In this document: piece after piece, positions 18,456 to 37,942 of the stretch
Layout of the letters: each line of letters starts with the position of its first letter
Position numbering within the stretch: position 1 is the stretch's first letter
IMG/VR virus record: IMGVR_UViG_3300027749_002876
Coordinates: 1 to 64,000 of that record
Strand: one strand, 5' to 3'
Length of the DNA: 64,000 nt
Notes under the pieces: model-generated
What the model was told of the DNA's origin: nothing
What the model saw: only the letters and a program-made list of their open reading frames with translations
The model's database searches: none
Program-made: the position numbers and the translations under genes

Positions 18456-18722
18456 ATGTCAGATTACAACAGAACCTTTAATGGTGACGCAAAGATTAAA
18501 CTAACGCAATTGATTAACGAGGGCATGACAGTCATGCACGAAATTGATACATTGAATGGCGGTTTAACAGATACTATCAAAGCAGTAGCAGAAGAATTGG
18601 AAATCAAAGCCAGTACACTGAAGAAAGCTATTCGTATTGCACACAAAGCAAGTCTCGGTCAGACTACCAAAGACCATGACGAACTTGTGACGATTTTAGA
18701 GACCGTTGGTAAAACCCTTTGA
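18456..18722 (+). CDS. small dsDNA-binding protein (T4 DsbA/GapR-like)
   Basis: AAGGAG SD; helical pattern TDTIKAVAEELEIKASTLKKAIRIA; directly upstream of the polymerase. Confidence 0.55.
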   Translation: MSDYNRTFNGDAKIKLTQLINEGMTVMHEIDTLNGGLTDTIKAVAEELEIKASTLKKAIRIAHKASLGQTTKDHDELVTILETVGKTL

Positions 18723-22124: not shown

Positions 22125-22859
22125 ATGAAAGATAATTTACAAGACTTGATTCAACATACACATGGCTTAGGCAATGTTGACTTAATCAAAATCACAGGTA
22201 CAGATCAAGAGACACAAGTTAACGCAGTAGCAGAAGACAAATCTGTTATTGTTAGTGGTTCATTTAAGAATCCAAATGCAGGTTTTATTGGTACGTTTGG
22301 TATGCCTAACTTAGGCAAATTAAAAACAATTTTAGGCTTTGATGACGTTTATGATTCAGATGCTAAAATTAATATTACATATGTAAAAAAAGATGGAGTT
22401 GATGTTCCATCAGCAATTCACTTTGAAACTAAGAACGGTGACTTTGTTAATGACTATAGATTGATGAGTAAAGCAATTGTTGAAGAAAAAGTCAAAACTG
22501 TTACCTTCAAGGGTACTACATGGAATGTTGAATTTGAACCTACAATTGCAGGCATTCAACGACTAAAGAAGCAAGCAAGTGCTAACAGTGAAGAAGATCA
22601 TTTTACATTGACTACAGTTAATGGTGACTTGAAAGCTAACTTTGGTGATCCATCAACTCACAGTGGTAACTTTGTGTTTCAAGCTGGTGTAGGTGGAACA
22701 TTGAACAAAACATGGAACTGGCCTGTTAAGGTATTCTTGGCAATCATGGATCTTCCCGGTGACAAGACAATTCGTGTAGCTGATGCTGGTGCAACTGAGA
22801 TTACAGTTGACAGTGGTTTGGCAACATATCGTTACTTACTTCCAGCAAACGCAAAATGA
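22125..22859 (+). CDS. probable DNA polymerase sliding clamp (gp45-like)
   Basis: 244 aa beta-rich protein near the polymerase, C-terminal Y-x-Y-L-L-P-A. Confidence 0.55.
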   Translation: MKDNLQDLIQHTHGLGNVDLIKITGTDQETQVNAVAEDKSVIVSGSFKNPNAGFIGTFGMPNLGKLKTILGFDDVYDSDAKINITYVKKDGVDVPSAIHFETKNGDFVNDYRLMSKAIVEEKVKTVTFKGTTWNVEFEPTIAGIQRLKKQASANSEEDHFTLTTVNGDLKANFGDPSTHSGNFVFQAGVGGTLNKTWNWPVKVFLAIMDLPGDKTIRVADAGATEITVDSGLATYRYLLPANAK

Positions 22860-23242
22860 TTGACTATGTACACGGCGGTATATTCATGAATGTAACTAGT
22901 ACTAAAGGGGCAACTCCCTACATCAATACTGGTCAACCAATAACAGGCATGGTATCATTTGATGGTGTTAGTCAAACTATGAAAGTTTATGATGGTCATG
23001 GTTGGCAAGCTGTTGGTGGTGGCACTGCTACTGTTAATCTATCGCATGATGCTATCAGTATACTAAAGTGGGCTGAACAGAAAATGCTAGAAGAAGCCGA
23101 GCGCAATAAATTAGCAGAAACAAATCCCGCTATCAAAGACCTTGTTGAACAGATTAAACAAAAAGAAGAACAAATAAATATGGTTCAAACTCTACTTAAT
23201 AGTCCAGGTCATAATGAAATCAAAAATTCTATGGTACCATAA
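22856..23242 (+). CDS. hypothetical protein
   Basis: translationally coupled ORF. Confidence 0.75.
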   Translation: MIDYVHGGIFMNVTSTKGATPYINTGQPITGMVSFDGVSQTMKVYDGHGWQAVGGGTATVNLSHDAISILKWAEQKMLEEAERNKLAETNPAIKDLVEQIKQKEEQINMVQTLLNSPGHNEIKNSMVP

Positions 23243-24795
23243 TGGAACAAGTTAATTTATCAGCAAGTCATAATCCCGATTGGGCATTGTTCTTACCTGC
23301 AGTCAGTAGTTTTTATATTGCTGGCTTGGGTAAGCAACGTGAGGGCGAAGTATACTTTGAACCTCAACGTATACCTGCACAATTCAATGGTGATGTTGAG
23401 AAACTGAACTTTCTTAATAGCAAAGAAGGATTATACTATTACAAGTGGGGTTTGTATAGTGCAGGTCATGCTAACTTAGATACTACCAAAGATGATCCTA
23501 ACGAAAGTATCATTCGCAAACGTGAAAGTGGTACATTCATGTTGGGTGACAGTGGCGGCTTTCAGATTTTAAAGGCTCAGTGGCCAGCAGACTGGAAAGA
23601 TCCTAACTGTCCACGTGCTATGGTAAAACGTAAAGCTGTATTGAACTGGATGGACACATACATGGACTATGGTATGTGTTTAGATATCCCATCACAATCT
23701 CTATCTACATTTCATATCAAAGATCCAAAGACAGGTAAGAGTGCTCATGGAATCAGTACAATTGAAGAAGCTATTAGTGCTACTCATATCAACAATGAAT
23801 ACTTTATTAAACATCGTAATGGTAACTGTAAGTTCTTAAATGTGTTGCAAGGTCGTAATCATACACAGAGTGATGATTGGTATGAAGAAATGAAAAAGTA
23901 TTGTGACCCAAACATCTATCCAGATAATCACTTTAATGGTTGGGCATTCGGGGGTCAGAACAAGATTGATGTACACTTGATGTTGCGTAGACTTGTTAAT
24001 ATCATACATGATGGATTACTAGTAGAAGGTAAACATGATTTGATTCACTGTTTGGGTGTATCAATTTTAGAGTATGCGGTACTCTTCACCGACATTCAAA
24101 AAGCTATTCGTAAGTATCACAACCCTAAACTACAGATTACATTTGACTGTGCAAGCCCATTCTTTAGTGCGGCTAAGGGTCTAGCATATTTTAACACAGC
24201 TATTGAACATAACAAGAAATGGTCTTATCAAATGGAAAAGACTGCTGAGAAAAAGTCTTATGCTAGTGATACCCGTAAGTTTAGAGATGCGGTATTGGCT
24301 GAGGGTATCCATAAAGTGTTTACAGATAGTCCAGTAACTGACCTGTTGACCTTAAAGGACCTTTGCTATCGTGGTCAAGGCTTCATTGGTCAACATGGTA
24401 AAGAAACTAAAACCAGTTGGGACACATTAAGCTATACATTACTGCAAAGTCACAATGTTTATACACACATGGCTGCTGTGCAAGAAGCTAATCGTCAATA
24501 TGAACAAGGTGTAATGCCTAAGATGGTTATGAATCGTTTTGATGATGAACACTTTGGTGAAATTGTTGATAAGATATTTGCACAAAACGATAGACAAAAG
24601 AGTCTAGATATGATAGAATCACATAGTAGCTTCTGGATGCAAATGAAATCAGGTAGTCAAGGTTTCAGTGGTAAGAAAGCAATGAACGCTATGACAATGT
24701 TTGACCAATTGTTTGAAGTAAATAATAGTGAGCCGGAAGTTGATGAAGTCATTGAAGACAGTGATGATGCAATGTCCGAAATCTTAGGAGAATAA
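23242..24795 (+). CDS. dpdA: TGT-fold DNA 7-deazaguanine transglycosylase (DpdA-like)
   Basis: DSGGFQ, MCLDIP, NVLQG, GWAFGG, HCLG, ITFD motifs; clustered with folE/queD/queE. Confidence 0.8.
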   Translation: MEQVNLSASHNPDWALFLPAVSSFYIAGLGKQREGEVYFEPQRIPAQFNGDVEKLNFLNSKEGLYYYKWGLYSAGHANLDTTKDDPNESIIRKRESGTFMLGDSGGFQILKAQWPADWKDPNCPRAMVKRKAVLNWMDTYMDYGMCLDIPSQSLSTFHIKDPKTGKSAHGISTIEEAISATHINNEYFIKHRNGNCKFLNVLQGRNHTQSDDWYEEMKKYCDPNIYPDNHFNGWAFGGQNKIDVHLMLRRLVNIIHDGLLVEGKHDLIHCLGVSILEYAVLFTDIQKAIRKYHNPKLQITFDCASPFFSAAKGLAYFNTAIEHNKKWSYQMEKTAEKKSYASDTRKFRDAVLAEGIHKVFTDSPVTDLLTLKDLCYRGQGFIGQHGKETKTSWDTLSYTLLQSHNVYTHMAAVQEANRQYEQGVMPKMVMNRFDDEHFGEIVDKIFAQNDRQKSLDMIESHSSFWMQMKSGSQGFSGKKAMNAMTMFDQLFEVNNSEPEVDEVIEDSDDAMSEILGE

Positions 24796-24796
24796 T

Positions 24797-25009
24797 ATGC
24801 CATACACAAATCGTATTAAAACACTAGAAGAATCAATTAGATTGCTTGATAACCAAATTTTTCAATTAGAAAAAGAAGGTTCTAGTGATGAGAAAAAATT
24901 GATTCAATTAAAAGAAACTAAAGAAAAATATACCAAAGAAGTACGTGTAATGATTCGTGCTCAATGGGATCATGACCACGAAACAGTAGACTTAGAGGAT
25001 GATAGATGA
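24797..25009 (+). CDS. small coiled-coil hypothetical protein
   Basis: AGGAG SD. Confidence 0.75.
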   Translation: MPYTNRIKTLEESIRLLDNQIFQLEKEGSSDEKKLIQLKETKEKYTKEVRVMIRAQWDHDHETVDLEDDR

Positions 25010-25461
25010 TTGAACAACAAGCACAAGCCTTAACCGAACAGCGTCAACGCATTAAAGATAAAGCAGTGCGTACAATTTTTGTACGTTTTCAAAAAGAAGG
25101 TATTCATAAATACCCAGCGGCAGCAACAGACCCAAGCTTGGCAACAGGTGATGAGTATGATGTTAGCTTTCTAGCAACTCCACATCGTCACATCTTTCAT
25201 TTTGAAGTGACGATTGAAGTATTTCACAACGACCGTGATATCGAGTTTATTCAATTTAAACGATGGTTAGAGAATCAATATTCTCAAAACATTCTTCAAT
25301 TGGATTACAAAAGTTGTGAAATGATTAGTGATGACCTCTATGATGTTATCGCAACTCGATATCCAGATCGTAACATTGTTATTCAAGTATCAGAAGATAA
25401 TGAAAACGGTGCTACGATTGTTTACAATACTTATCAACCTTCTCTTTCAATCGCTATTTAA
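25006..25461 (+). CDS. QueD-paralogue T-fold protein, DpdL-like (candidate CDG decarboxylase)
   Basis: LATPHRHIF = LxxxHRHxF; DRDIEF, SCEM, VSEDNENG; next to dpdA. Confidence 0.65.
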   Translation: MIEQQAQALTEQRQRIKDKAVRTIFVRFQKEGIHKYPAAATDPSLATGDEYDVSFLATPHRHIFHFEVTIEVFHNDRDIEFIQFKRWLENQYSQNILQLDYKSCEMISDDLYDVIATRYPDRNIVIQVSEDNENGATIVYNTYQPSLSIAI

Positions 25462-25474
25462 AGGAATTATTAAA

Positions 25475-25681
25475 ATGGCAAAATCACAATTTCAAACTAA
25501 TCCACGTGTTACACAAATCTTTGAGGACCTAGAAGGTTATCTCATGTTCTGTCAGGACTATGGATACAAATACGATGAGTCAACATTGTATGACATGCGG
25601 AGCTTTGCGTTCCGTCAATATAGCAAAGCCTGTACAGGCAAGTGGGCTAAAGATCAATGGCAAGAGGATATGCGCCCATGA
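25475..25681 (+). CDS. hypothetical protein (68 aa)
   Basis: AAGGA SD before ATG 25475; start refined from 25328. Confidence 0.75.
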   Translation: MAKSQFQTNPRVTQIFEDLEGYLMFCQDYGYKYDESTLYDMRSFAFRQYSKACTGKWAKDQWQEDMRP

Positions 25682-26439
25682 AAGTAGTATTAATTACAGG
25701 TGGCTTTGATCCACTACATAGCGGACATATTGCATATATTAATGCGGCAAAAAAATTAGGAGACATGCTAGTCATCGGACTTAATAGTGATGCTTGGTTA
25801 TCTCGAAAAAAAGGTAGACCTTTCTTGCCATTAGGTGAGCGTGTGGCAGTAACTTCGGCATTAGATACACCCGATGCATTGTTGTTATTCGATGATAGTG
25901 ATGACACTGCTAAAGATGCTATTAAGCAACTTAGAGAAAACTACCCAGAAGCAACTATTGTATTTGCTAACGGTGGTGATAGAACTAGCGACAATATTCC
26001 TGAAATGGATATCAATGATAATAACATTGAATTCGTTTTTGGTGTAGGCGGAGAAGACAAAGTAAATTCTAGTAGTTGGATTCTTGATACTTGGAAAGCA
26101 CCCAAAACAGAACGTGAGTGGGGCTATTATCGTGTGTTGCATGAAGTAGATGGTACTAAGGTAAAAGAACTTACAGTGGAGCCAAAACAATCTCTCAGTA
26201 TGCAAAAACACAGTAAACGCAGTGAGTACTGGATTGTTACTGAAGGTAAATGCAAATTGCGTAAGTATGCTGAAACGGGTGAATTAATTGAGACAATATT
26301 AAGTAAACATGATACAATTACTATTCAACCTGATGAATGGCATCAGTTAGTCAACACATTTACTAAGCCGTGTAAAATTGTAGAGATTCAGTATGGTAAG
26401 AAATGTGTGGAAGAAGATATCAAACGACAAAATGCATAA
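25678..26439 (+). CDS. cytidylyltransferase fused to a mannose-6-phosphate-isomerase-type cupin
   Basis: TGGFDPLHSGH, NGGDR, SSSW; WGYY...LSMQKH..RSEYW...EIQYG. Confidence 0.85.
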   Translation: MKVVLITGGFDPLHSGHIAYINAAKKLGDMLVIGLNSDAWLSRKKGRPFLPLGERVAVTSALDTPDALLLFDDSDDTAKDAIKQLRENYPEATIVFANGGDRTSDNIPEMDINDNNIEFVFGVGGEDKVNSSSWILDTWKAPKTEREWGYYRVLHEVDGTKVKELTVEPKQSLSMQKHSKRSEYWIVTEGKCKLRKYAETGELIETILSKHDTITIQPDEWHQLVNTFTKPCKIVEIQYGKKCVEEDIKRQNA

Positions 26440-27631
26440 ACTATTTTACATGGGCCTAGAGCCTTACAAAGCAAGATACACACTACAGTTACAAGACTGG
26501 AATGAAAGTGTATTTAAACGCAGGGGCATTAACTATGTTATTGTCCCGGGCGAAACATTAAGTAATGACCAGGCTATCGTTACTGGTCAGGTACTAGACG
26601 CACATGGACGCACATACTTCGGTATGAGTCAACTGATGAATCTAGTTAAGATGATGAAGCAAGGTGAGGTAGGCGCAGGTGATATAGTTTATTTTGAAGA
26701 TATGTTTCAGCCGGGCATTGAATCATTGCCCTACATTATGAAACAGATTCCAGTTACGAGTCGTCCTAAGATTTATGTTCGTTGTCTAGCACAAAGTATT
26801 GACCCTGATGATTTTGTACACGTATGGGGTATGAGTGAGTTCATGGGTCACTATGAGAAGATGGTTGATTCATTCGCTGACGGTGTACTCGCTAGTAATG
26901 AAGAAATGGTTATGCATATGAAGATTGCGGGTTGGAAGGCACCAATCTATAATATTTCAGGCTTAGCATTTGGTAAAGAAGAAGTACGTGGTCGTATCAA
27001 TAATAACATCAAGACTTTCAATGATCGTACTATGCGTATTGCATTCAGTGCAAGATGGGATCAAGAAAAGCAACCAGACTTTTATATGGATGTGATTGAA
27101 GAATTCTACAACCGTTATGGTATAAAGGATCGTCACGGTGTATATCGTGGTGTAGAATTCTGCGTATTCAGTGGTAGTAAACTGAAAAGTAACAACGATA
27201 GTTATATGAAGCGTACACAAGATATGCAAAGTCGTGGGTTGCTAAAAGTATACGAAGACCTAGATAAGAATCAATATTACGAATTATTGAATGATACTAG
27301 AGTATTATTTAACTGTGCATTGCAAGATTGGGTAAGTAACACAGTGAGTGAAGCAGACAGTTTAGGTGCTAACGTATTGTATCCAGCATATCGCAGTTTC
27401 CCAGAAACATTTGCAAATGACTATACAAGAATGTATGCGCCCTGGTCAGTTGAAGATGCAACTATTAAGTTGTATAATATGTTACATCAACCGCATGTAA
27501 ATCAAGGTAAGATTAGTGATTGGACTAATGGTACAATCGATAGAATTTGTGATATCCTAGAAGGTAACGGACAACAATGGTTGCGTATGGATAGTGATTA
27601 CCGCAAACACACCCGTGAAGCAAAATATTAA
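26432..27631 (+). CDS. GT-B fold glycosyltransferase-like protein
   Basis: ARWDQEKQP and ALQDWVSNTVSEA...YRSFPE resemble the GT4 donor-binding region. Confidence 0.65.
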   Translation: MHKLFYMGLEPYKARYTLQLQDWNESVFKRRGINYVIVPGETLSNDQAIVTGQVLDAHGRTYFGMSQLMNLVKMMKQGEVGAGDIVYFEDMFQPGIESLPYIMKQIPVTSRPKIYVRCLAQSIDPDDFVHVWGMSEFMGHYEKMVDSFADGVLASNEEMVMHMKIAGWKAPIYNISGLAFGKEEVRGRINNNIKTFNDRTMRIAFSARWDQEKQPDFYMDVIEEFYNRYGIKDRHGVYRGVEFCVFSGSKLKSNNDSYMKRTQDMQSRGLLKVYEDLDKNQYYELLNDTRVLFNCALQDWVSNTVSEADSLGANVLYPAYRSFPETFANDYTRMYAPWSVEDATIKLYNMLHQPHVNQGKISDWTNGTIDRICDILEGNGQQWLRMDSDYRKHTREAKY

Positions 27632-27641
27632 GGAGAAAATT

Positions 27642-27839
27642 ATGAGCGCACAAAATGATATTGAAAGTAGTTTGGCAGCATACAATAGTGAGAATGACAA
27701 GTTTGTCAAAGGTAATGCAGCCGCTGGTACACGTGCCCGCAAAGCATTAGCAGAACTAGCTAAAGCAGTTAAAGCTCGCCGTAATGAAATTACAGCAGAG
27801 AAAACCGCACGTGCTGAAGAAAAAGCAAAAGCTAAGTAA
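27642..27839 (+). CDS. histone H1-like (Hc1-type) nucleoid protein
   Basis: KGNAAAGTRARKALAEL motif; AAGGAG SD. Confidence 0.7.
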   Translation: MSAQNDIESSLAAYNSENDKFVKGNAAAGTRARKALAELAKAVKARRNEITAEKTARAEEKAKAK

Positions 27840-27845
27840 TCGTGA

Positions 27846-27916
27846 TAAATATGTTGTAGGCTACACAACGGTAGCTTACACTTCAAAACAAAAACCATCA
27901 CAAAGGAAGGTTATCT
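27846..27916 (+). promoter_or_regulatory. late promoter plus structured 5' leader of folE
   Basis: TAAATA 27846-51; 10-bp hairpin 27855-80; weak hairpin 27893-912 over the SD. Confidence 0.55.
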
Positions 27917-28597
27917 ATGAGTTATAATAAAACAAAAACAGATCCAGAGTTGGGTCAACAAGTGCATGAACACTTAGTCAAAATGGGTGTTGAAACCCCA
28001 ATCAAACATCGTAATCTAGACCGTAAAGAAAAGATTGATATCATTGCAGGTAACTTCACCGAGATCATGCGTGTTCTCGGTTTAGATTTATCAGATGATA
28101 GTTTAATTGACACACCTAATCGTGTCGCCAAGATGTACGTCAACGAAATCTTTTGGGGACTAGACTATGAAGCATTCCCTAAATGTACAACAGTTAACAA
28201 CAAGATGCAATACAATGAAATGGTTGTAGAGCGTAATGTTAATGTTCAATCTAACTGCGAACATCATTTTGTAGTCATCGATGGGTTGGCTACTGTAGCT
28301 TATGTCCCTAAACAAAAAGTATTAGGGCTTAGTAAGATAAACAGAATTGTAGAATATTTCAGTAAGAGACCTCAGATACAAGAGAGGTTAACAGAGCAAA
28401 TTTTTCACACCTTACAGTTTATCCTTGATACAGAAGATGTTGCAGTTATGATTGATGCACAACACTATTGCGTTAAAAGTCGTGGCGTAGAAGATACGGG
28501 TAGTAGCACAGTTACTTGTCGTTTAGGTGGTGGTTTTAAAACTGATCCTGCCGCGCGTAGCGAGTTTTTACAAATTGCTAACAAAGGTTGTAAATAA
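27917..28597 (+). CDS. folE: GTP cyclohydrolase I
   Basis: TPNRVAKMY, CEHH, GLSKINR, QIQERLT, HYCVKSRG. Confidence 0.97.
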   Translation: MSYNKTKTDPELGQQVHEHLVKMGVETPIKHRNLDRKEKIDIIAGNFTEIMRVLGLDLSDDSLIDTPNRVAKMYVNEIFWGLDYEAFPKCTTVNNKMQYNEMVVERNVNVQSNCEHHFVVIDGLATVAYVPKQKVLGLSKINRIVEYFSKRPQIQERLTEQIFHTLQFILDTEDVAVMIDAQHYCVKSRGVEDTGSSTVTCRLGGGFKTDPAARSEFLQIANKGCK

Positions 28598-28794
28598 TGT
28601 TAAAAGATAGACGAGTTTTACTAGAACAAGAAATTAAAAAAGCACACGATGAGGCTGCAGCCTTATACTTAGATATTGTTACACATGACGGTGATGTTCA
28701 TAGCACTGAGTATAAATCAATTAAAGATAAAATTATGAATCTAGAGTTTGATCTTAATGTCGTAAATCAATTAATACATAAAGGTCACAAATAA
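28597..28794 (+). CDS. hypothetical protein
   Basis: TAATG-coupled ORF. Confidence 0.7.
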   Translation: MLKDRRVLLEQEIKKAHDEAAALYLDIVTHDGDVHSTEYKSIKDKIMNLEFDLNVVNQLIHKGHK

Positions 28795-29030
28795 TGGGCT
28801 ACCGTAAGCAAATAGATTATAATAGTGTACATCATCAAATCTATATGAGTGGAGTTGAACTTCATAGTAACTATAATGACGGTTTCAATCAATTTGAAAT
28901 CAAAAAAGATTTACATAAACTGAAATGGTTGTTAGATGAAATTATAGCTGATGCGCCTACATTTACAGGTGAGGATGAATTTTTAAAAGAGCACGACCAA
29001 ACCAAAATGTGGAAAACACTTTCAAAATGA
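28794..29030 (+). CDS. hypothetical protein
   Basis: TAATG-coupled ORF. Confidence 0.7.
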   Translation: MGYRKQIDYNSVHHQIYMSGVELHSNYNDGFNQFEIKKDLHKLKWLLDEIIADAPTFTGEDEFLKEHDQTKMWKTLSK

Positions 29031-29500
29031 TATTTAATCACATTAAAAAACTTAAAGCAGAAGGTAAACGAATTGGTATTACATTTAGTACTTTTGACAT
29101 GCTACACGCCGGACATGTTGCTATGTTAAGTGAAGCTAAAAATCATTGCGACTACCTTATCTGTGGATTACAAACTGATCCAACAATTGATAGGCCTGAT
29201 ACTAAGAACAAACCTGTACAAAGTATTGTAGAACGACAGATTCAACTTGCGGCTTGTCGCTATGTTGATGAAGTTGTTGTTTATCAAACTGAACAAGACC
29301 TAAGAGACTTGTTACTTATTCTTCCAGTAGATGTACGCATTTTGGGCGTTGAATATAAGGATAAAGACTTCTCAGGCGCAGAAGAATGCTATAATAGAAA
29401 CATTGAAATAGTATTTAATGGTCGTGACCATAGTTTCAGTTCAAGTAGTTTACGGAAACGAGTGGCTGATGCCCAAATCATTAACACTCTTAATAAATAA
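29027..29500 (+). CDS. glycerol-3-phosphate-cytidylyltransferase (TagD)-like protein
   Basis: STFDMLHAGH, RYVDEV, RDHSFSSS. Confidence 0.85.
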   Translation: MIFNHIKKLKAEGKRIGITFSTFDMLHAGHVAMLSEAKNHCDYLICGLQTDPTIDRPDTKNKPVQSIVERQIQLAACRYVDEVVVYQTEQDLRDLLLILPVDVRILGVEYKDKDFSGAEECYNRNIEIVFNGRDHSFSSSSLRKRVADAQIINTLNK

Positions 29501-29504
29501 CTAT

Positions 29505-29570
29505 AGCGGTCTTCGGACATCATCCCGCTTTACAAATTCTGCTGCCTATGCTATAATACAACATAGGAGA
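29505..29570 (+). ncRNA. candidate structured cis-regulatory RNA (preQ1-I-like pseudoknot + anti-SD hairpin) upstream of queD
   Basis: AGCGG/CCGCT stem, UUCG sub-loop, UUACAAA tail, CCTATG/CATAGG hairpin over AGGAG; begins 5 nt after TAAATA. Confidence 0.45.
29529..29557 (+). promoter_or_regulatory. sigma70-type promoter for queD
   Basis: TTTACA-17 nt-TATAAT with extended TG. Confidence 0.65.
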
Positions 29571-29574
29571 AAAC

Positions 29575-30057
29575 ATGGCAAACAAAAAATTCTTTTCAAC
29601 AAAGACATACAGACAAATAGGTCCTGTCGCATATCGTCAATGGCGTGCTGACAGTCATTGTAACTTAATTCATGGTTACGCTATGAGTTTCCACTTTGAG
29701 TTTGAAGCTGACACATTAGATGCTCGTAATTGGGTAACTGACTTTGGCGGTCTAAAGCCACTCAAAGAAGTATTAGAAGAATGGTTTGACCATACTTTAT
29801 TAGTTGCACAAGATGACCCTATGCGTGAACATCTGTTAGAACTAGGTAGATTAAAACTAGCTAAGATTACAGAAGTAGAACGTACTGGTTGTGAAGGTAT
29901 TGCTGACTTCTTATACGAATATATTAACACAATCTTTTTACCCAACTGCGGTAGCGAAGAAGCTAAACGTGTATGGTGCTGTAGAGTAGAGGTACGTGAA
30001 ACTGATAGCAATATGGCAGGACGTGGTGGTCACAGGGAAGATAGAGAGTTTGAATAA
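29575..30057 (+). CDS. queD: 6-carboxytetrahydropterin synthase
   Basis: CNLIHGY, DFGGLK, FDH, E-T motifs. Confidence 0.9.
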   Translation: MANKKFFSTKTYRQIGPVAYRQWRADSHCNLIHGYAMSFHFEFEADTLDARNWVTDFGGLKPLKEVLEEWFDHTLLVAQDDPMREHLLELGRLKLAKITEVERTGCEGIADFLYEYINTIFLPNCGSEEAKRVWCCRVEVRETDSNMAGRGGHREDREFE

Positions 30058-30473
30058 TGTTGAAAACAGAAATGGTAGATAAGGTAGGACATACCTTAGT
30101 AGACATATTTCATAGGCTTGCATTGTTTGCTATTGGTGCCGCAACAGTATGGGCAGCCGGATGTACTTTCGTTGAACTGTTTCAGAAACATCATGCCTCA
30201 GTCGGTGACCTGTTGTTGATGTTTATTTATTTAGAAATGGGTGCAATGGTAGGCATTTATTTCAAGACCAATCATATGCCTGTTAGGTTCTTGCTATACA
30301 TTGCAATCACAGCACTAACACGACATATGGTAGATATAATGAGTCATCAGCCAATTAACATTGTTGAAATGTTATCTGTAGCCGGTTCTACATTTGTTAT
30401 AGCAATAAGCGTATTAGTTATTAGATATACTAGTGCAAAATATCCTAGCAACAATAAAGACGAGGTAGCTTAA
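30057..30473 (+). CDS. psiE: phosphate-starvation-inducible PsiE-family membrane protein
   Basis: DLLLMFIYLE, PVRFLLYIAITALTR, four hydrophobic segments. Confidence 0.85.
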   Translation: MLKTEMVDKVGHTLVDIFHRLALFAIGAATVWAAGCTFVELFQKHHASVGDLLLMFIYLEMGAMVGIYFKTNHMPVRFLLYIAITALTRHMVDIMSHQPINIVEMLSVAGSTFVIAISVLVIRYTSAKYPSNNKDEVA

Positions 30474-30664
30474 TGAATAGTTTAGAAAAAATCTGGGCAA
30501 GAGCGACCGGTCATCTGATGGGTAATACAGATGATGATCGTCCTGACGTTCCCATTCTTACATTGGGTGAAGCAAGAATTGCATTGTTCCTAAAAACTTT
30601 CTGGGTGGTGTTACATGTGATAACATGTTGTTTCATCATAGCAAATACAATCAGACATTGGTAA
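30473..30664 (+). CDS. small membrane protein
   Basis: C-terminal hydrophobic helix, coupled ORF. Confidence 0.7.
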   Translation: MNSLEKIWARATGHLMGNTDDDRPDVPILTLGEARIALFLKTFWVVLHVITCCFIIANTIRHW

Positions 30665-30665
30665 T

Positions 30666-31514
30666 ATGGCACAATTAAAAATTTCAGAATTATTTTATAG
30701 TATTCAGGGTGAAGGTAGATACATGGGTGTTCCCTCTGTGTTCCTACGAACTTATGGATGTAATTTCACATGCGGTGGCTTTGGAATGTCTAAGGGAGAA
30801 ATGAGTAGTGAGAGAGATGTTATTGCAATTAAAGCAGAAGATTATACAGATTATAAATCCCTACCGCTTGTCAGCACAGGATGTGATAGTTATGCATCTT
30901 GGGACCCTCGTTTCAAACATCTTAGTCCTATGCTCACTACCGATAATATTGTTGGTAGTATTATGGATATACTCCCTCATAGTCGTTGGATGGATGAGCA
31001 CCTTGTTATCACGGGCGGTGAACCTCTGCTTGGATGGCAAAGAGCATATCCAGAATTACTTTCACATGAAAAAATGAGAAGTCTCAAAGAGATTACATTT
31101 GAAACTAATGGCACACAAGAACTCAGTCAAGATTTAAAAATATATCTACAACAATGGAAGATTTACAGAGAAAAAAATGCACTTACATTTAGTGTTAGTC
31201 CTAAACTAAGTATCAGCGGTGAAAAGTGGGAAGAAGCAATACTTCCCGATGTTATTACTCAATATGAAGACGTTGGTTTTGTATATCTTAAATTTGTTGT
31301 AGCGACAGAAGATGATGTACTAGAAGCAGAGAAGGCAGTTAAAGAATATCGTGTTGCAGGATTCAGAGGTCCAGTCTACTTGATGCCGTGCGGTGGTGTT
31401 GAAAGTATGTACAGTATGAATGCTAAGAATGTAGCGATTGCGGCAATGAAGCGTGGATGGCGTTATAGTGACAGACTTCAAGTGCCGTTGTTTAAAAACG
31501 AGTGGGGCACATAA
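30666..31514 (+). CDS. queE: 7-carboxy-7-deazaguanine synthase (radical SAM)
   Basis: ELFYSIQGEG, CNFTC...CD with insert, TGGEP, ETNGT, SVSPK. Confidence 0.92.
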   Translation: MAQLKISELFYSIQGEGRYMGVPSVFLRTYGCNFTCGGFGMSKGEMSSERDVIAIKAEDYTDYKSLPLVSTGCDSYASWDPRFKHLSPMLTTDNIVGSIMDILPHSRWMDEHLVITGGEPLLGWQRAYPELLSHEKMRSLKEITFETNGTQELSQDLKIYLQQWKIYREKNALTFSVSPKLSISGEKWEEAILPDVITQYEDVGFVYLKFVVATEDDVLEAEKAVKEYRVAGFRGPVYLMPCGGVESMYSMNAKNVAIAAMKRGWRYSDRLQVPLFKNEWGT

Positions 31515-31732
31515 TGCCACAAACACAATCATACGATCATTTCTATGAAAGAATGATAGGAGCCGAATATAAGTTTGCTTGGTTTCCAGAAACGTGTCAT
31601 TTGTCAGGTAAACGTGTTTGGTTAAAGAAAGGCTACAGATTAACTAGAATTATCACTGGCCCCGGCGATTCAATCTTTGAATATCGTTGGCACGACAAGA
31701 ACGAACATATAATTTGGAAATTAAAACAATGA
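31514..31732 (+). CDS. hypothetical protein
   Basis: TAATG-coupled; start refined from 31502. Confidence 0.7.
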   Translation: MPQTQSYDHFYERMIGAEYKFAWFPETCHLSGKRVWLKKGYRLTRIITGPGDSIFEYRWHDKNEHIIWKLKQ

Positions 31733-33054
31733 GAACATACGACAAACGTATTGGCTTTTTGGTAAGTTATCAAACATTGATACCGCATGGTGGTATAGGA
31801 CAGTTTGCTAAAAGCTTCTGTGAGTTGATGGATAGTCACAATATCAAAGTTGATATCATTACTGACAAAGAACCACAAGATAATGAATTTGTAAAATCAT
31901 TAAAAGCAAACATTATCAGTCCCAAAGAGTCATTGCCTTATACAACACACAGTAACATCTTTATGTATGGTGATACATTCTGTTATGAGCGTATGGCTAA
32001 CTTCCGTAATGCGATTATAGAAGCATTAGAACATAACTTGTACGATGTATTTGTTTGTAACACATATGAAGCAGTTCAGGTTGCTAGTACTATTGGTCTT
32101 GAAGATGTAATTCAAATCATTGCTTATACACATTTAGAAAGTCAAATCTTTAAAGATACTAAGAATCCATTCTTGTACAATACAAATGTGTTGATGCGCC
32201 AGCAGTTAGAAACAGAAAATATTTCTGTAGGTACGCAAAGTGTATTCAACTTGTTACATGTTAACGGAACGGCACATCATCTTCCTATTCCAATAACTGA
32301 ACGTGACTTGTTGACTGAGTATACAGGCGAGCGTGAAGGCATATTGTTTGTTGGTCGATGGGAAGAAGGAAAAAATCCTGAATTGTTTATTGATTTGATT
32401 GAACAAACCAAACTACCTGCTAAAGTAATGACTAGCCCCAATGGCGTAAAGAAGTTTGAAGAACGATTAAAGAAGATTGGTGCAACATACGATGTTCGTG
32501 CCAGCATTGTAGGACAAGATAAAGTAGATTTTATTAAGTCCAGTAGAATTGCATTTAATCCTAGTGTCGTTGAGAGTTATGGTATGGCATTCTATGAACA
32601 ATATATTCAATTACCTACACTTGTATTAGAGAATCAGCGTTGGACTAACAACTTTAATAACAGTTTTTTCTATACTTGTAACAAAAAGAACATGGCTGAG
32701 ACAGCAAAAGAGTTATATGATATCTTTGAAAAGACTGAAAGATGGTATAATCTTGGTTCACTAGAACATGCAAAGCAACAAGAATCTACAGTGTTTCACA
32801 AGTGGAACGAATGTTTTTCTGACTTTTCACCTAGAAATTCTAATACTAATACAGCTAAGATTTGCAATGAAACGACTACAACACATAAAGATTTTATTGA
32901 AAAGCTAGGTCGTAGTGTTATTTGTATTGATGATGTTCGTAGTGTGTTAACTAACAAACACAAGTTTCGTGTAATATATACAGACAATGACACATACTTG
33001 ACCAAAGACCCTAGTTTTGAACCAACAGAGGAAGAAAGTTTATTTTCATGGTAA
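31729..33054 (+). CDS. GT4-like glycosyltransferase
   Basis: HGGIG, FVGRWEEGKNP, PSVVESYGMAFYE. Confidence 0.85.
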   Translation: MRTYDKRIGFLVSYQTLIPHGGIGQFAKSFCELMDSHNIKVDIITDKEPQDNEFVKSLKANIISPKESLPYTTHSNIFMYGDTFCYERMANFRNAIIEALEHNLYDVFVCNTYEAVQVASTIGLEDVIQIIAYTHLESQIFKDTKNPFLYNTNVLMRQQLETENISVGTQSVFNLLHVNGTAHHLPIPITERDLLTEYTGEREGILFVGRWEEGKNPELFIDLIEQTKLPAKVMTSPNGVKKFEERLKKIGATYDVRASIVGQDKVDFIKSSRIAFNPSVVESYGMAFYEQYIQLPTLVLENQRWTNNFNNSFFYTCNKKNMAETAKELYDIFEKTERWYNLGSLEHAKQQESTVFHKWNECFSDFSPRNSNTNTAKICNETTTTHKDFIEKLGRSVICIDDVRSVLTNKHKFRVIYTDNDTYLTKDPSFEPTEEESLFSW

Positions 33055-33872
33055 AGAAAGTTTTAATCACAGGTAGTAGTGGCTACATAGGTAGTCATCT
33101 TGCAAAGATGCTTGAGAAAGAATATGAAGTCTATGGACTGGACGTTCGTCCCCCTCAAGTTGAGATGGAAAGATTCATGCAGGTGAATATCAATCAACCA
33201 TTTACTATTGAAGAAGAATTTGATTGTGTGATTCATTTGGCTGCATTGGTTCGTGTTAGTGAAAGTGAGTTGAAACCTATTCAATATTATATCACTAACT
33301 TGAATGGTACGATGAATGTAGTAAACAAGATTAAAACAAAAAACTTTATCTTTGCTAGCACAGGTCTTGCTGAGTATTGCTATGATCCATATGGTACTAG
33401 TAAGAAAGCCGCAGAAGATGTAGTGAAAGAATTTTGTACTACTCATCGTCCAACACCATATACAATCTTTAGATTTTATAACGTTATAGGAAGCACCGGC
33501 GCATCCCCTACTAACCCCGATGGGTTAATGTATAATTTGTTGAAGGCACGCGAGACAGGTGAGTTTACCGTGCACGGCAATGACTATGATACCCGTGATG
33601 GATCATGTGTGCGTGATTATGTTCATGTGAATGAAATTTGTGATGCATTGCAACATGCTATTGAAAACCCTAGCAATCAAATTGAATGTTTGGGACACGG
33701 TGTTGGTAGAACTGTTACCGAAATTGTAGATATGTTTAAGAAAGTCAACAATGTTGATTTCTCTGTTCAAGTAGGTCAAAGAAGAAAGGGTGATTTACCT
33801 TCAACCGTGTTAGAAGATGTATCACCCTATATGCAGAACTTGTATACGTTAGAAGAATTACTTAAAGTTTAA
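33048..33872 (+). CDS. galE: NAD-dependent epimerase (GalE-like)
   Basis: TGSSGYIGSH, YGTSK, FRFYNV, DGSCVRDYVHV. Confidence 0.85.
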   Translation: MVKKVLITGSSGYIGSHLAKMLEKEYEVYGLDVRPPQVEMERFMQVNINQPFTIEEEFDCVIHLAALVRVSESELKPIQYYITNLNGTMNVVNKIKTKNFIFASTGLAEYCYDPYGTSKKAAEDVVKEFCTTHRPTPYTIFRFYNVIGSTGASPTNPDGLMYNLLKARETGEFTVHGNDYDTRDGSCVRDYVHVNEICDALQHAIENPSNQIECLGHGVGRTVTEIVDMFKKVNNVDFSVQVGQRRKGDLPSTVLEDVSPYMQNLYTLEELLKV

Positions 33873-37884: not shown

Positions 37885-37913
37885 TTGACTTTATTGCGTA
37901 GGTATGTTACACT
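37885..37913 (+). promoter_or_regulatory. sigma70-type promoter for uvsE
   Basis: TTGACT-17 nt-TACACT. Confidence 0.6.
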
Positions 37914-37921
37914 ACATGTAT

Positions 37922-37927
37922 TATTTA
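37922..37927 (-). promoter_or_regulatory. late promoter for the minus-strand operon
   Basis: TGATAAATA on the minus strand upstream of 37866. Confidence 0.55.
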
Positions 37928-37942
37928 TCACTTTGGACTACT

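What the first reader, a model, noticed from the sequence alone, without database searches (positions are those of the whole stretch)
23242..31514. 7-deazaguanine DNA modification pathway without QueC but with a DpdL-like QueD paralogue
Seen: a DpdA-like TGT just downstream of polymerase and clamp, plus folE, queD, queE and a second T-fold gene with LATPHRHIF. No queC, queF or gat-queC is in the window. Known: FolE-QueD-QueE make CDG and DpdA exchanges G in DNA. From memory, the LxxxHRHxF QueD paralogue DpdL is linked to CDG decarboxylation to 7-deazaguanine. Inference: the genome carries dDG and/or dCDG as anti-restriction protection.
Basis: partly seen in the sequence, partly recalled or inferred. 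Interest (0 to 1): 0.65.

Follow-up and report, generated by a model that had tools for sequence, protein, structure and literature searches.

The report
Deazaguanine DNA-modification cluster with conserved glycosyltransferase
A giant freshwater phage carries the genes for replacing guanine in its DNA with 7-deazaguanine without QueC, and among them sits a conserved glycosyltransferase, with sugar-activating genes nearby, that suggests the modified base may also carry a sugar.

Summary
Window 23242-31514 encodes a TGT-fold transglycosylase, a DpdL-type QueD paralogue (LATPHRHIF), FolE, QueD and QueE. No QueC or QueF reaches the Pfam cut-off anywhere in the 524-kb contig. The 517-aa transglycosylase has no Pfam, PHROG, NCBIfam or PDB sequence match. 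Its AlphaFold model is a clear TGT fold (Z 19.3), and its family profile matches the experimentally validated DpdA2 of Vibrio phage VH7D (hhalign 95.9%).

A second glycosyltransferase and a GalE-like epimerase follow immediately downstream.

The GT4 enzyme is a near-obligate neighbour of DpdL. In IMG/VR loci with enough flank, DpdL lay beside it in 59 of 59 and 77 of 77. It also neighbours DpdL in six cultured phage lineages: PA5oct, ACP17, Phosso, BUCT-ZZ01, Xanthomonas BUDD/X1 and BCSR5. It is absent from the whole genome of phiST, the phage in which plain dDG was measured.

Best reading: a DpdL-type 7-deazaguanine DNA modification, with a new DpdA clade, whose product is probably further glycosylated. 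This is inferred and no chemistry was tested.

The contig appears to be two related phages joined together.

The parts
18719..21436 (+). Family B DNA polymerase. Context only: it marks the start of the conserved PolB-clamp-DpdA-DpdL-GT gene order.
   Evidence: Pfam DNA_pol_B 1.9e-38 and DNA_pol_B_exo1 7.7e-24. The same gene order is seen in PA5oct, Phosso and the marine contigs.
22125..22859 (+). 244-aa protein, probably a sliding clamp (context).
   Evidence: PHROG 12062, function unknown. It is 31% identical to the Phosso protein annotated 'DNA polymerase III sliding clamp beta' and 32% to a PA5oct 'structural protein'. Fold not tested.
23242..24795 (+). Divergent DpdA-like DNA guanine transglycosylase (TGT fold, PA5oct type).
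   Evidence: AlphaFold2 pLDDT 90.8. All top 50 Foldseek hits are TGTs. VIA Z 19.3, rmsd 4.3, 304 aa aligned, residues 10-431. D103, S104, G106 (DSGGFQ), D148, H269, G272 and D302 are invariant in a 60-member family alignment. hhalign against the validated VH7D DpdA2 gives 95.9% (E 6e-9), against ACP17 DpdA 96.8%, and against the BUDD 'queuine tRNA-ribosyltransferase' 96%.
25006..25461 (+). DpdL: a QueD paralogue and predicted 7-carboxy-7-deazaguanine decarboxylase.
   Evidence: LATPHRHIF fits LxxxHRHxF. Identity is 35% to phiST DpdL, 54-56% to ACP17, 58-59% to PA5oct and 65% to Phosso. H34, H60, H62, H74, E80, C104, E105 and E130 are invariant. hhalign against phage QueD gives 74%, E 3e-5.
25657..26439 (+). 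Fusion of an RfaE-domain-II-like nucleotidyltransferase and a mannose-6-phosphate-isomerase-type cupin. Accessory NDP-sugar supply, variably present.
   Evidence: Pfam CTP_transf_like 3.7e-13, MannoseP_isomer 1.9e-20 and Cupin_2. TIGR02199 5.8e-22. Present in 22 of 80 related loci.
26432..27631 (+). GT4-type (GT-B, retaining) glycosyltransferase, the conserved partner of DpdL and DpdA. The ORF opens at 26393, but homologues start at the ATG at 26432.
   Evidence: AlphaFold2 pLDDT 83.7. VIA Z 24.7 to sucrose-phosphate synthase, 24.4 to MshA, 23 to BshA and 21.8 to pterin glucosyltransferase. The family profile hits PDB GT1-family enzymes (8xsg, 1e-4). R208, E212, K213 and E307 are invariant, and position 299 is D or E, giving (D/E)x7E. 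It is homologous to PA5oct EST35_0317 and ACP17 ASD50404. Neighbourhood statistics are. dN/dS 0.07.
27917..28597 (+). FolE, GTP cyclohydrolase I.
   Evidence: Pfam PF01227 7e-61 and PHROG 2197 6e-74.
29009..29500 (+). Second RfaE-domain-II / TagD-like nucleotidyltransferase (accessory).
   Evidence: Pfam CTP_transf_like 7.8e-13. TIGR02199 1e-22 and TIGR01518 1.6e-16. Homologues at 57-59% identity sit between PolB and the clamp in the marine relatives. Present in 31 of 80 loci in each of two locus sets.
29575..30057 (+). QueD-like CPH4 synthase. The motif reads CNLIHGY, not the canonical CxxxHGH.
   Evidence: Pfam PTPS 1e-15, PHROG 2389 2.4e-42 and TIGR03367 3e-9, below the NCBIfam cut-off. 70% identical to ACP17 QueD. 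The same CxxxHGY form is found in phiST and ACP17.
30666..31514 (+). QueE, radical-SAM CDG synthase.
   Evidence: PHROG 2076 6.4e-53 and TIGR03365 2.3e-16, below the NCBIfam cut-off.
31687..33054 (+). Second GT-B-like glycosyltransferase (accessory).
   Evidence: Weak Pfam Glycos_transf_1, 1.6e-3. A 39%-identical homologue lies inside the deazaguanine operon of cyanophage BUCT-ZZ01, between FolE and the DpdA2-like gene. Present in 15 of 80 loci.
33048..33872 (+). GalE-like NAD-dependent sugar epimerase (accessory).
   Evidence: Pfam Epimerase 2.6e-29 and TIGR01179 galE 2.3e-47. More distant epimerases (24-27% identical to this one) lie next to the nucleotidyltransferase in the marine relatives.

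Best explanation
The region is a QueC-independent, DpdL-type pathway that replaces guanine in phage DNA with a 7-deazaguanine base.

**Shown by sequence and fold**
- FolE, a QueD-like T-fold enzyme and the radical-SAM enzyme QueE are present. By established queuosine biochemistry these convert GTP to 7-carboxy-7-deazaguanine (CDG).
- A QueD paralogue with the DpdL signature is present.
- A deeply divergent transglycosylase with a TGT fold is present. It keeps the DSGGFQ and FDxxSP aspartate motifs and is a remote homologue of the validated DpdA2.

**Inferred from the literature**
- DpdL decarboxylates CDG to 7-deazaguanine.
- The DpdA-like enzyme then swaps this base for guanine in duplex DNA after replication, which protects the DNA from restriction.

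**Inferred here from gene neighbourhood**
- A GT4 retaining glycosyltransferase almost always accompanies DpdL together with DpdA2-related transglycosylases. It is missing from phiST, the phage in which plain dDG was measured.
- This enzyme is therefore part of the same pathway.
- It most likely transfers a sugar onto the deazaguanine, either on the free base before insertion or on the base already in DNA.
- The donor would be an NDP-hexose or NDP-heptose, or possibly CDP-glycerol. The neighbouring nucleotidyltransferases, PMI-type cupin and epimerase would supply it. The second glycosyltransferase could extend it.
- The acceptor atom and the sugar are unknown.
For: **Enzyme identities:**

**DpdL definition and the phiST dDG measurement:** PMC10516641.

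**Homology to validated DpdA2:**

**The glycosyltransferase is tied to DpdL**
- In 80 loci fetched with DpdL, the GT was present in 67.
- In loci fetched with the GT, DpdL lay beside it in 59 of 59 of the window's own clade. In the ACP17/marine-type family it was in 77 of 80, and the 3 misses lack upstream flank.
- tblastn of the GT against 50,697 phage records hits only DpdL-bearing phages, each time within about 3 kb of DpdL.
- In cyanophage BUCT-ZZ01 both glycosyltransferases sit inside one operon: QueE-PRTase-QueD-FolE-GT-DpdA-DpdL-GT.
- The marine relatives place a nucleotidyltransferase, an epimerase and, in one of them, a phosphomannomutase in the same block.
- The GT is absent from the whole genomes of phiST, RHph_I1_18, Ahp1 and Bakedbeans.

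**The GT looks active:** the catalytic-type residues R208, E212, K213 and (D/E)x7E are conserved, and dN/dS is 0.07.

**Other support**
- Cui et al. could not obtain dDG from ACP17 dpdA plus dpdL in E. coli. They suggested that other enzymes may be required.
- PA5oct DNA resists G-containing restriction sites.
- Glycosyltransferases that glycosylate 7-deazapurine bases are known from the huimycin and dapiramicin pathways.
Against: - No chemistry was measured for this phage or for any GT-bearing relative.
- Plain dDG has no obvious hydroxyl group to accept a sugar.
- DpdL's decarboxylase activity is only predicted. The reconstitution also failed for phiST, which has no GT, so the missing GT cannot be the whole explanation for that failure.
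- Much of the neighbourhood count comes from one broad phage clade with conserved gene order. The independent support is about six other lineages.
- The nucleotidyltransferases, epimerase and second GT are variably present. They could serve other glycans.
- T4-type DNA glucosyltransferases are not among the top 50 structural matches. The nearest are GT4 enzymes with small-molecule, lipid or polymer acceptors.
Confidence: 0.55

Rival explanations
1. Plain dDG (or dCDG) only. FolE, QueD, QueE, DpdL and DpdA make and insert 7-deazaguanine. The glycosyltransferases and sugar-nucleotide genes sit in the replication module but serve something else, such as virion or host-surface glycans, or another base.
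For: - phiST makes 100% dDG with FolE, QueD, QueE, DpdL and DpdA3 and no GT.
- Vibrio phage VP1 is also reported to carry dDG in place of all its G.
- The nucleotidyltransferases, second GT and epimerase are present in only 15-39 of 80 loci.
- dDG offers no hydroxyl acceptor.
- The contig encodes at least one other glycosyltransferase, at 83.6 kb.
Against: - The GT lies beside DpdL in effectively all loci with enough flank, and in about six unrelated phage lineages with otherwise different gene orders.
- Searching the phage collection with the GT recovers only DpdL-bearing phages.
- The contig has only one thymidylate-synthase-family gene, with a canonical-level score (357 bits). No hydroxymethyl-pyrimidine pathway is evident for the GT to act on.
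Confidence: 0.3
2. The GT is an obligatory helper of the DpdA2-related transglycosylases rather than a decorating enzyme. It might make a glycosylated or otherwise activated base that is the true substrate. The sugar is not retained, and the final DNA base is dDG.
For: - The GT co-occurs with long DpdA2-related or PA5oct-type transglycosylases. It does not co-occur with the short DpdA3 of phiST.
- ACP17 dpdA plus dpdL alone gave no dDG.
- The nearest structures include small-molecule GT4 enzymes: MshA, BshA, SenB, LmbT and a pterin glucosyltransferase.
Against: - No TGT-family enzyme is known to need a glycosylated base donor.
- The phiST reconstitution failed too, without a GT in that system.
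- This is purely inferential.
Confidence: 0.08
3. The cluster does not act on DNA. Either the TGT-like enzyme modifies tRNA, or FolE, the T-fold enzymes and the GT make a soluble pterin or deazapurine glycoside.
For: - The fold matches are to tRNA-guanine transglycosylases.
- Tetrahydrobiopterin glucosyltransferase is among the structural neighbours of the GT (Z 21.8).
- Soluble glycosylated deazapurines exist in nature, such as huimycin.
Against: - The family profile matches DpdA2, which has been shown to insert deazaguanines into DNA.
- The gene sits between the clamp and replication genes in every relative.
- There is no QueC or QueF to make the preQ0 or preQ1 needed for tRNA queuosine.
- PA5oct DNA is restriction-resistant at G-containing sites.
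- Known secondary-metabolite clusters of this type lack insertion enzymes.
Confidence: 0.05

Closest known systems
Cellulophaga phage phiST dDG system: FolE, QueD, QueE, DpdL, DpdA3 (Cui et al. 2023, PMC10516641)
   Same: - QueC-less gene set.
- DpdL with LxxxHRHxF (35% identity).
- QueD of the same CxxxHGY type.
- FolE and QueE.
- A transglycosylase too divergent for the Pfam TGT model.
   Different: - phiST uses a short DpdA3 (259 aa). hhalign to this family gives only 70%.
- phiST has no GT4 homologue anywhere in its genome.
- phiST has no sugar-nucleotide genes in the region of its cluster that was examined.
- Its product was measured as plain dDG replacing all G.
Clusters of Pseudomonas phage PA5oct (Wroclawvirus), Acidovorax phage ACP17 and Sinorhizobium phage Phosso
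   Same: - The same trio of transglycosylase, GT4 and DpdL, beside PolB and the clamp or beside FolE, QueD and QueE.
- The PA5oct transglycosylase is 34% identical and of the same family (profile E 5e-150).
- PA5oct DNA resists restriction at sites that contain G.
   Different: - These phages have no nucleotidyltransferase, cupin, epimerase or second GT homologue detectable in the cluster regions examined.
- ACP17 uses a DpdA2-type enzyme.
- PA5oct DpdL reads HFH instead of HRH.
- The chemical identity of their modification is unpublished in the library searched.
DpdA2 of Vibrio phages VH7D and nt-1, an experimentally validated DNA transglycosylase
   Same: TGT fold. The DSGG[FL]Q, (L/F)D-IP, QG, H-x-LG and S(F/Y)D-SS motifs align (hhalign 95.9%, E 6e-9).
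   Different: - About 20-26% identity over only 167 aligned columns.
- DpdA2 phages encode QueC and QueF or ArcS, and insert preQ0, preQ1 or G+ at low frequency.
- This clade is QueC-less and DpdL-linked.
Huimycin and dapiramicin (glycosylated 7-deazapurine bases) and tubercidin (a QueC-less CDG pathway) of actinomycetes
   Same: They set chemical precedents. A glycosyltransferase can attach a sugar to a 7-deazapurine base. A QueC-less pathway can use CDG and include a decarboxylation step.
   Different: - These are soluble secondary metabolites with no nucleic-acid insertion enzyme.
- Huimycin and dapiramicin start from preQ0 and so need QueC.
- Tubercidin uses a UbiD-family decarboxylase and a phosphoribosyltransferase, not a T-fold DpdL.
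T-even phage glucosyl-hydroxymethylcytosine (alpha- and beta-glucosyltransferases)
   Same: A phage-encoded GT-B enzyme that adds a sugar to an already modified DNA base as an additional layer of anti-restriction protection.
   Different: - The base is a pyrimidine, and the acceptor is a hydroxymethyl group.
- Those enzymes are not among the top 50 structural matches of this GT.

Membership tests
DpdA / TGT superfamily (DNA 7-deazaguanine transglycosylases) | TIM-barrel fold of the tRNA-guanine transglycosylase type | tested here: met
   AlphaFold2 pLDDT 90.8. All top 50 Foldseek hits are TGTs (E about 3e-7). VIA Z 19.3, 304 aa aligned, residues 10-431.
DpdA / TGT superfamily (DNA 7-deazaguanine transglycosylases) | Conserved catalytic aspartate motifs (DSGGFQ, and the nucleophile Asp in an FD-x-x-(S/L)P-type motif) | tested here: met
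   D103, S104, G106, D148 and D302 are invariant in 60 family members. They align with the same motifs in VH7D DpdA2, ACP17 DpdA and the BUDD TGT. Equivalence to Z. mobilis Asp102, Asp156 and Asp280 is from my own knowledge and was not superposed here.
DpdA / TGT superfamily (DNA 7-deazaguanine transglycosylases) | Sequence match to the curated TGT model (Pfam PF01702) | tested here: not met
   No hit for the protein or anywhere in the contig at E<=1. The same is true of the phiST genome, which encodes DpdA3. The model does not reach these clades.
DpdA / TGT superfamily (DNA 7-deazaguanine transglycosylases) | Homology to an experimentally validated DNA-acting DpdA | tested here: met
   hhalign of the family profile against VH7D DpdA2: 95.9%, E 5.8e-9. 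VH7D DpdA2 activity is reported in PMC10516641.
DpdA / TGT superfamily (DNA 7-deazaguanine transglycosylases) | Exchange of guanine in DNA for a 7-deazaguanine base | not testable with these tools
   Needs an enzyme assay or nucleoside mass spectrometry.
DpdA3 subfamily (phiST and Campylobacter phages) | Sequence relatedness to phiST DpdA3 | tested here: inconclusive
   BLASTP finds nothing. hhalign gives 70%, E 4e-5. tblastn of phiST DpdA3 finds only Cellulophaga, Chryseobacterium and Bacillus phages. This protein is better placed as a separate PA5oct-type clade nearest to DpdA2.
DpdL (QueD-paralogous predicted CDG decarboxylase) | Signature LxxxHRHxF replacing the QueD motif CxxxHGH | tested here: met
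   L56-A-T-P-H60-R-H62-I-F64.
DpdL (QueD-paralogous predicted CDG decarboxylase) | Conserved histidines and glutamates shared with QueD (T-fold) | tested here: met
   H34, H60, H62, H74, E80, E105 and E130 are invariant in 14 DpdL proteins from 12 phage groups. hhalign against phage QueD is only 74%, and the HMMER profile finds no PDB T-fold protein. The T-fold assignment therefore rests mainly on homology to phiST DpdL, which reaches HHpred 99.89% to PF01242 in PMC10516641.
DpdL (QueD-paralogous predicted CDG decarboxylase) | Genomic setting: with DpdA, FolE, QueD and QueE, and without QueC | tested here: met
   The co-assembled complete relative B and a DTR-complete 346,856-bp relative also have no QueC match at the thresholds used. 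Caveat: only about 173 kb of the window's own phage is in the contig.
DpdL (QueD-paralogous predicted CDG decarboxylase) | CDG decarboxylase activity | not testable with these tools
   The activity is only predicted in the literature, and heterologous tests failed.
QueD (CPH4 synthase) | Signature motif CxxxHGH | tested here: not met
   The motif reads C29-N-L-I-H33-G-Y35. The same CxxxHGY form occurs in the QueD of phiST, ACP17, RHph_I1_18, BUCT-ZZ01 and BCSR5. Because phiST makes dDG with this form, it is probably functional. It is nonetheless a variant, and it scores below the NCBIfam cut-off.
GT4 retaining glycosyltransferases (GT-B fold) | Two-Rossmann GT-B fold with a C-terminal nucleotide-sugar-binding domain | tested here: met
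   pLDDT 83.7. VIA Z 24.7 to 20.3 across GT4 enzymes, 300-348 aa aligned. Profile-to-PDB hits to the Glycos_transf_1 domain. Pfam PF00534 and PF13524 hits are recorded for close and distant homologues.
GT4 retaining glycosyltransferases (GT-B fold) | E-x7-E motif and basic residues that bind the phosphates | tested here: met
   R208, E212, K213, Q298 and E307 are invariant in 53 sequences of two subfamilies. Position 299 is D in this clade and E in the ACP17 type. The assignment of roles to these residues is from my own knowledge of GT4 enzymes.
GT4 retaining glycosyltransferases (GT-B fold) | Donor and acceptor specificity | not testable with these tools
   Needs biochemistry. The neighbouring genes suggest an NDP-hexose or NDP-heptose, or CDP-glycerol.

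The most novel reading that the evidence does not exclude
Phages of this type, which is very abundant in fresh and marine waters and includes the cultured PA5oct, ACP17, Phosso, BUCT-ZZ01, Xanthomonas BUDD/X1 and BCSR5, carry a sugar-bearing 7-deazaguanine in their DNA. The pathway would be DpdL plus a new DpdA clade plus a dedicated GT4 glycosyltransferase. To my knowledge no glycosylated 7-deazaguanine has been reported in a genome. It would also explain why dpdA plus dpdL of ACP17 could not be reconstituted.
Probability: 0.35. Interest if true: 0.85.

Novelty: new variant of a known kind. Interest (0 to 1): 0.64.

Why it matters
7-deazaguanine DNA modifications are a major phage counter-defence. 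They are also the target of newly found defences, such as END nucleases and Dag glycosylases.

- **An open pathway.** The DpdL branch is the least understood. Its decarboxylase is only predicted, and reconstitution failed. A glycosyltransferase that travels with DpdL in many phage lineages gives a concrete and cheap candidate for the missing component, or for a further and still unseen modification.
- **Testable now.** Several carriers are in culture: PA5oct, ACP17 and BUCT-ZZ01.
- **Annotation reach.** The divergent transglycosylase family has 834 clusters at 50% identity in the protein library and no Pfam or PHROG match. Recognising it as DpdA-like would extend annotation of modified-DNA phages. 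This matters for restriction-based cloning, for sequencing artefacts and for choosing phages for therapy; PA5oct is a therapy candidate.

Tried and rejected
**The 517-aa protein**
- Pfam, PHROGs, NCBIfam, phmmer against the PDB and a 60-sequence profile against the PDB all found nothing. Only fold comparison and profile-profile comparison worked.
- Megablast of the region against 50,697 phage records found no match.
- The search for related loci with the diverse DpdA alignment failed because it had no conserved stretch.

**DpdL**
- The DpdL profile against the PDB gave no T-fold hit.

**QueC candidates**
- The two weak QueC-model hits in the contig are paralogous PP-loop proteins. They carry YSGGLDSE but lack the QueC cysteine tail. 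They have no Pfam or PDB match, and only one has a weak PHROG hit, to a family of unknown function. I rejected them as QueC, and their function remains open.
- True short QueC-like genes exist in relatives G002-G004 but have no homologue in this contig.

**Another target for the GT**
- I considered a hydroxymethyl-pyrimidine pathway. The contig has one canonical-scoring ThyA and no ThyX, so there is no support.
- A nucleotide-level route through a phosphoribosyltransferase, as in BUCT-ZZ01 and the marine relatives, is not available here. The contig has no PRTase.

**Other**
- Pfam GT4-conflict (PF20706) hits a different gene, at 83.6 kb, not this GT. The model also matches in all 14 control genomes.
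- The clamp identity of the 244-aa protein was not confirmed by a PDB sequence search.
- No complex-prediction job was run, because no physical binding is claimed.

Full report
**What is there.** The window is the first 64 kb of a 524,565-bp IMG/VR virus contig from freshwater metagenomes. On the + strand the gene order is as follows:

| Coordinates | Gene |
|---|---|
| 18719-21436 | Family B DNA polymerase |
| 21500-22066 | 2OG-Fe(II) oxygenase |
| 22125-22859 | 244-aa protein, probable sliding clamp |
| 22856-23242 | 128-aa ORF |
| 23242-24795 | 517-aa protein with GDSGGFQ |
| 24797-25009 | 70-aa ORF |
| 25006-25461 | 151-aa protein with LATPHRHIF |
| 25657-26439 | Nucleotidyltransferase-cupin fusion |
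| 26432-27631 | 399-aa protein |
| 27917-28597 | FolE |
| 28597-29030 | Two small ORFs |
| 29009-29500 | Second nucleotidyltransferase |
| 29575-30057 | QueD |
| 30057-30473 | PsiE-like membrane protein |
| 30473-30664 | 63-aa ORF |
| 30666-31514 | QueE |
| 31687-33054 | GT-B-like protein |
| 33048-33872 | GalE-like epimerase |

**The transglycosylase.** The 517-aa protein has no hit in Pfam, PHROGs, NCBIfam or the PDB by HMMER, even as a 60-sequence profile.
- It belongs to a large family: 834 clusters at 50% identity, and more than 6,000 sequences at 90%.
- In an alignment of 60 diverse members, D103, S104, G106, D148, H269, G272 and D302 are invariant.
- The AlphaFold2 model is confident (pLDDT 90.8, pTM 0.90).
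- Foldseek returns only tRNA-guanine transglycosylases in its top 50 (E about 3e-7). VIA-align gives Z 19.3, rmsd 4.3 Å and 304 residues aligned over residues 10-431.
- Profile-profile comparison links the family to ACP17's transglycosylase (96.8%), to a Xanthomonas phage protein annotated as queuine tRNA-ribosyltransferase (96%) and to Vibrio phage VH7D DpdA2 (95.9%, E 6e-9). The DSGG[FL]Q, D-IP, QG, H-x-LG and (F/Y)D-SS motifs are in register in these alignments.
- VH7D DpdA2 was shown to insert preQ1, preQ0 and some CDG into DNA (PMC10516641).
- ACP17's enzyme is itself DpdA2-like, at 34-36% identity to nt-1 and VH7D.
- Similarity to phiST DpdA3 is marginal (70%).

I therefore place the protein in the DpdA superfamily. 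It forms a separate, PA5oct-type clade nearest to DpdA2.

**DpdL.** Cui et al. 2023 define DpdL as a QueD paralogue in which CxxxHGH becomes LxxxHRHxF. They find it in phages with DpdA, FolE, QueD and QueE but no QueC. phiST, the type case, has dG fully replaced by dDG.
- The window protein reads L-ATP-HRH-I-F.
- Its identity is 35% to phiST DpdL, 54-56% to ACP17, 58-59% to PA5oct and 65% to Phosso.
- Across 14 DpdL proteins, H34, H60, H62, H74, E80, C104, E105 and E130 are invariant.
- The link to QueD is weak with the tools here: hhalign 74%, and no HMMER hit in the PDB. It rests mainly on the published HHpred result for phiST DpdL.
- The decarboxylase activity is a prediction. Heterologous expression of dpdL plus dpdA from phiST and from ACP17 gave no dDG.

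**QueC and QueF.** No QueC, QueF or Pfam-TGT match exceeds its cut-off anywhere in the contig.
- Two weak QueC-model hits are paralogous PP-loop proteins (YSGGLDSE). They lack QueC's cysteine tail and have no informative family or PDB match.
- A DTR-complete relative of 346,856 bp also has no QueC match at E<=0.01.
- Three other relatives carry short genes that look like QueC: SGGxDS plus a C-terminal SCE...HCxxCWWCxER tail. These have no homologue in this contig.
- One of those islands abuts a block that is syntenic with a part of the window's phage present in the contig. That part carries a PP-loop paralogue instead.

- *Fold.* pLDDT 83.7. VIA Z is 24.7 to sucrose-phosphate synthase, 24.4 to MshA, about 23 to BshA, about 22 to SenB and 21.8 to tetrahydrobiopterin glucosyltransferase.
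- *Sequence.* The family profile hits Glycos_transf_1 domains in the PDB. R208, E212, K213, Q298 and E307 are invariant, with a (D/E)x7E motif.
- *Homologues.* It is homologous to the unannotated genes that lie between the transglycosylase and DpdL in PA5oct (EST35_0317) and ACP17 (ASD50404).
- *Phage collection.* tblastn recovers it only from phages that also have DpdL, always within about 3 kb of DpdL. These are BUCT-ZZ01 (63% identity), ACP17, BCSR5, Xanthomonas BUDD and X1, and Phosso, where it is annotated 'glycosyltransferase'.
- *Loci fetched with DpdL.* Of 80 IMG/VR loci, 67 hold the GT and 73 hold the DpdA-like gene. The misses are short contigs.
- *Loci fetched with the GT.* DpdL is adjacent in 59 of 59 own-clade loci. 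In the ACP17/marine-type family it is adjacent in 77 of 80, and the three exceptions lack upstream sequence. The DpdA-like gene is present in 57 of 58 and 74 of 80.
- *GT-less phages.* The GT is absent from the complete genomes of phiST, RHph_I1_18, Ahp1 and Bakedbeans. These phages also lack this type of transglycosylase.

DpdL systems therefore come in two forms. The GT-less form is found with DpdA3 in phiST, where the product was measured as plain dDG. The GT-bearing form is found with DpdA2-related enzymes, and its product has not been measured.

**Sugar-nucleotide genes.** The window adds:
- two RfaE-domain-II / TagD-like nucleotidyltransferases, one of them fused to a mannose-6-phosphate-isomerase-type cupin;
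- a second GT-B-like protein;
- a GalE-like epimerase.

These genes are variably present, in 15-39 of 80 loci. They recur in the same block in distant relatives.
- Marine contigs show PolB-nucleotidyltransferase-(phosphomannomutase)-epimerase-clamp-DpdA-DpdL-GT-...-FolE-QueE.
- BUDD has a cytidylyltransferase 8 kb away.
- The T4-like cyanophage BUCT-ZZ01 places a homologue of the second glycosyltransferase between FolE and its DpdA.

All cluster genes have full-length orthologues in the second genome on the contig, with dN/dS of 0.04-0.20. The GT, at 0.07, is as constrained as the polymerase.

**How it most likely works.**
- *Shown:* the enzyme families and their linkage.
- *From established biochemistry:* GTP is converted to H2NTP by FolE, to CPH4 by QueD and to CDG by QueE.
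- *From the literature, as prediction:* DpdL converts CDG to 7-deazaguanine, and a DpdA exchanges it for guanine in DNA after replication.
- *Inferred here:* the GT4 enzyme belongs to this pathway. It most probably adds a sugar to the deazaguanine, on the free base or in DNA, using a donor made by the accessory genes.

Three points support that last inference:
- glycosylated 7-deazapurine bases made by glycosyltransferases exist in nature (huimycin and dapiramicin), as does a QueC-less CDG route with decarboxylation (tubercidin);
- PA5oct DNA is resistant at G-containing restriction sites and is attacked by nucleases that sense hypermodified DNA;
- the ACP17 reconstitution failed without this gene.

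Several points count against it:
- dDG has no obvious acceptor hydroxyl;
- the phiST reconstitution failed too, with no GT in that system;
- the accessory genes are variable;
- no chemistry exists for any GT-bearing phage.

I put the composite explanation at 0.55, plain dDG with an unrelated GT at 0.30, a helper role without a retained sugar at 0.08, and a non-DNA role at 0.05.

**Literature check.** Full-text searches for DpdL, for DpdA with phage, for deazaguanine with glycosyltransferase, and for CDG decarboxylase found no paper that links a glycosyltransferase to DpdL-type clusters or that identifies the PA5oct modification chemically.

**Assembly caveat.** A self-comparison shows three things:
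- positions 1-172.9 kb are colinear with, but inverted relative to, the rest of the contig, at 74-91% nucleotide identity;
- positions 172,924-177,012 recur at 520,477-524,565 at 99.6% identity;
- positions 172,924-520,476 therefore form a 347,553-bp unit with a terminal overlap.

Complete or near-complete relatives are 335-360 kb, and one of 346,856 bp has direct terminal repeats.

Logan contigs of the probable source run and of one other run bridge the junction. In a further run the B side is covered at depth 4-6 while the A side is mostly absent (000 bases laid).

The contig is best read as a partial phage A, which holds the window, joined to a complete related phage B. 'Absence from the genome' is therefore shown for B and for 173 kb of A, not for all of A.

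Noticed in passing
G000:C1 whole contig; junction at 172,924 (outside the window): The 524,565-bp 'genome' looks like two related phages assembled end to end. Positions 1-172.9 kb are inverted-colinear with the rest at 74-91% identity. Positions 172,924-520,476 (347,553 bp) close on themselves through a 4,089-bp repeat at 99.6% identity. A DTR-complete relative is 346,856 bp. One sequencing run holds the B side of the junction without the A side, although two runs have contigs that bridge it.
   Followed up: partly
G000:C1:136,797-137,669 (-) and 428,500-429,432 (-): Two paralogous PP-loop proteins (290 and 310 aa, 29% identical, motif YSGGLDSE). They have no Pfam or PDB match, and only one has a weak PHROG hit, to a family of unknown function. 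They are the only weak QueC-model hits in the contig. They lack QueC's C-terminal cysteine motif.
   Followed up: partly
Relatives G002:C1:283.2-283.8 kb and 296.3-297.0 kb; G003:C1:186 kb; G004:C1:100 kb (loci L253-L256): Some clade members that also carry DpdL encode short QueC-like proteins of 195-247 aa, with SGGxDS and a tail like SCE...HCxxCWWCxER. G002 has two of them. Their coexistence with DpdL is unexplained. No homologue exists in this contig.
   Followed up: partly
L094 (Synechococcus phage BUCT-ZZ01) 5447-5908; L090-L092 at about 9.3-10.4 kb: A purine phosphoribosyltransferase lies inside the deazaguanine cluster of the cyanophage and of the marine relatives, where it is followed by a HIT-family hydrolase. 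It may salvage released guanine, or it may provide a nucleotide-level route. This contig has none.
   Followed up: no
L099 (Vibrio phage Bakedbeans) 9254-10405: gp176 is a 383-aa protein whose C-terminal 120 residues are a DpdL domain. The roughly 250-aa N-terminal part is unidentified. The genome has no GT4 homologue and no detectable TGT.
   Followed up: no
window 44071-45333 (+): A 420-aa radical-SAM protein (Pfam Radical_SAM 2e-14; PHROG 14086) with a weak secondary match to QueE-like PHROG 2076. Function unknown.
   Followed up: no
window 21500-22066 (+): A 2OG-Fe(II) oxygenase sits between the polymerase and the clamp. A homologue was found in only 8 of 80 related loci, and none was detected in the second genome on the contig.
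   Followed up: no
window 30057-30664 (+): A PsiE-family membrane protein and a 63-aa hydrophobic ORF sit between QueD and QueE. They are conserved in the second copy (93-95% aa identity) but rare in other relatives (2 and 9 of 80 loci).
   Followed up: no
window 34804-35358 (-), 37904-38974 (+): An Fe/Mn superoxide dismutase and a UvdE-type UV endonuclease are encoded just downstream of the cluster. An AhpC-type peroxiredoxin and a CMD-family protein lie next to the PP-loop gene at about 137 kb.
   Followed up: no
G000:C1 218-220, 269-272, 276-278, 287-288, 357-361, 452-454, 512-513, 518-519 kb: A family of about 1-kb repeats at 71-80% identity is scattered through phage B. One member lies close to the A/B junction and may have caused the mis-join.
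   Followed up: no
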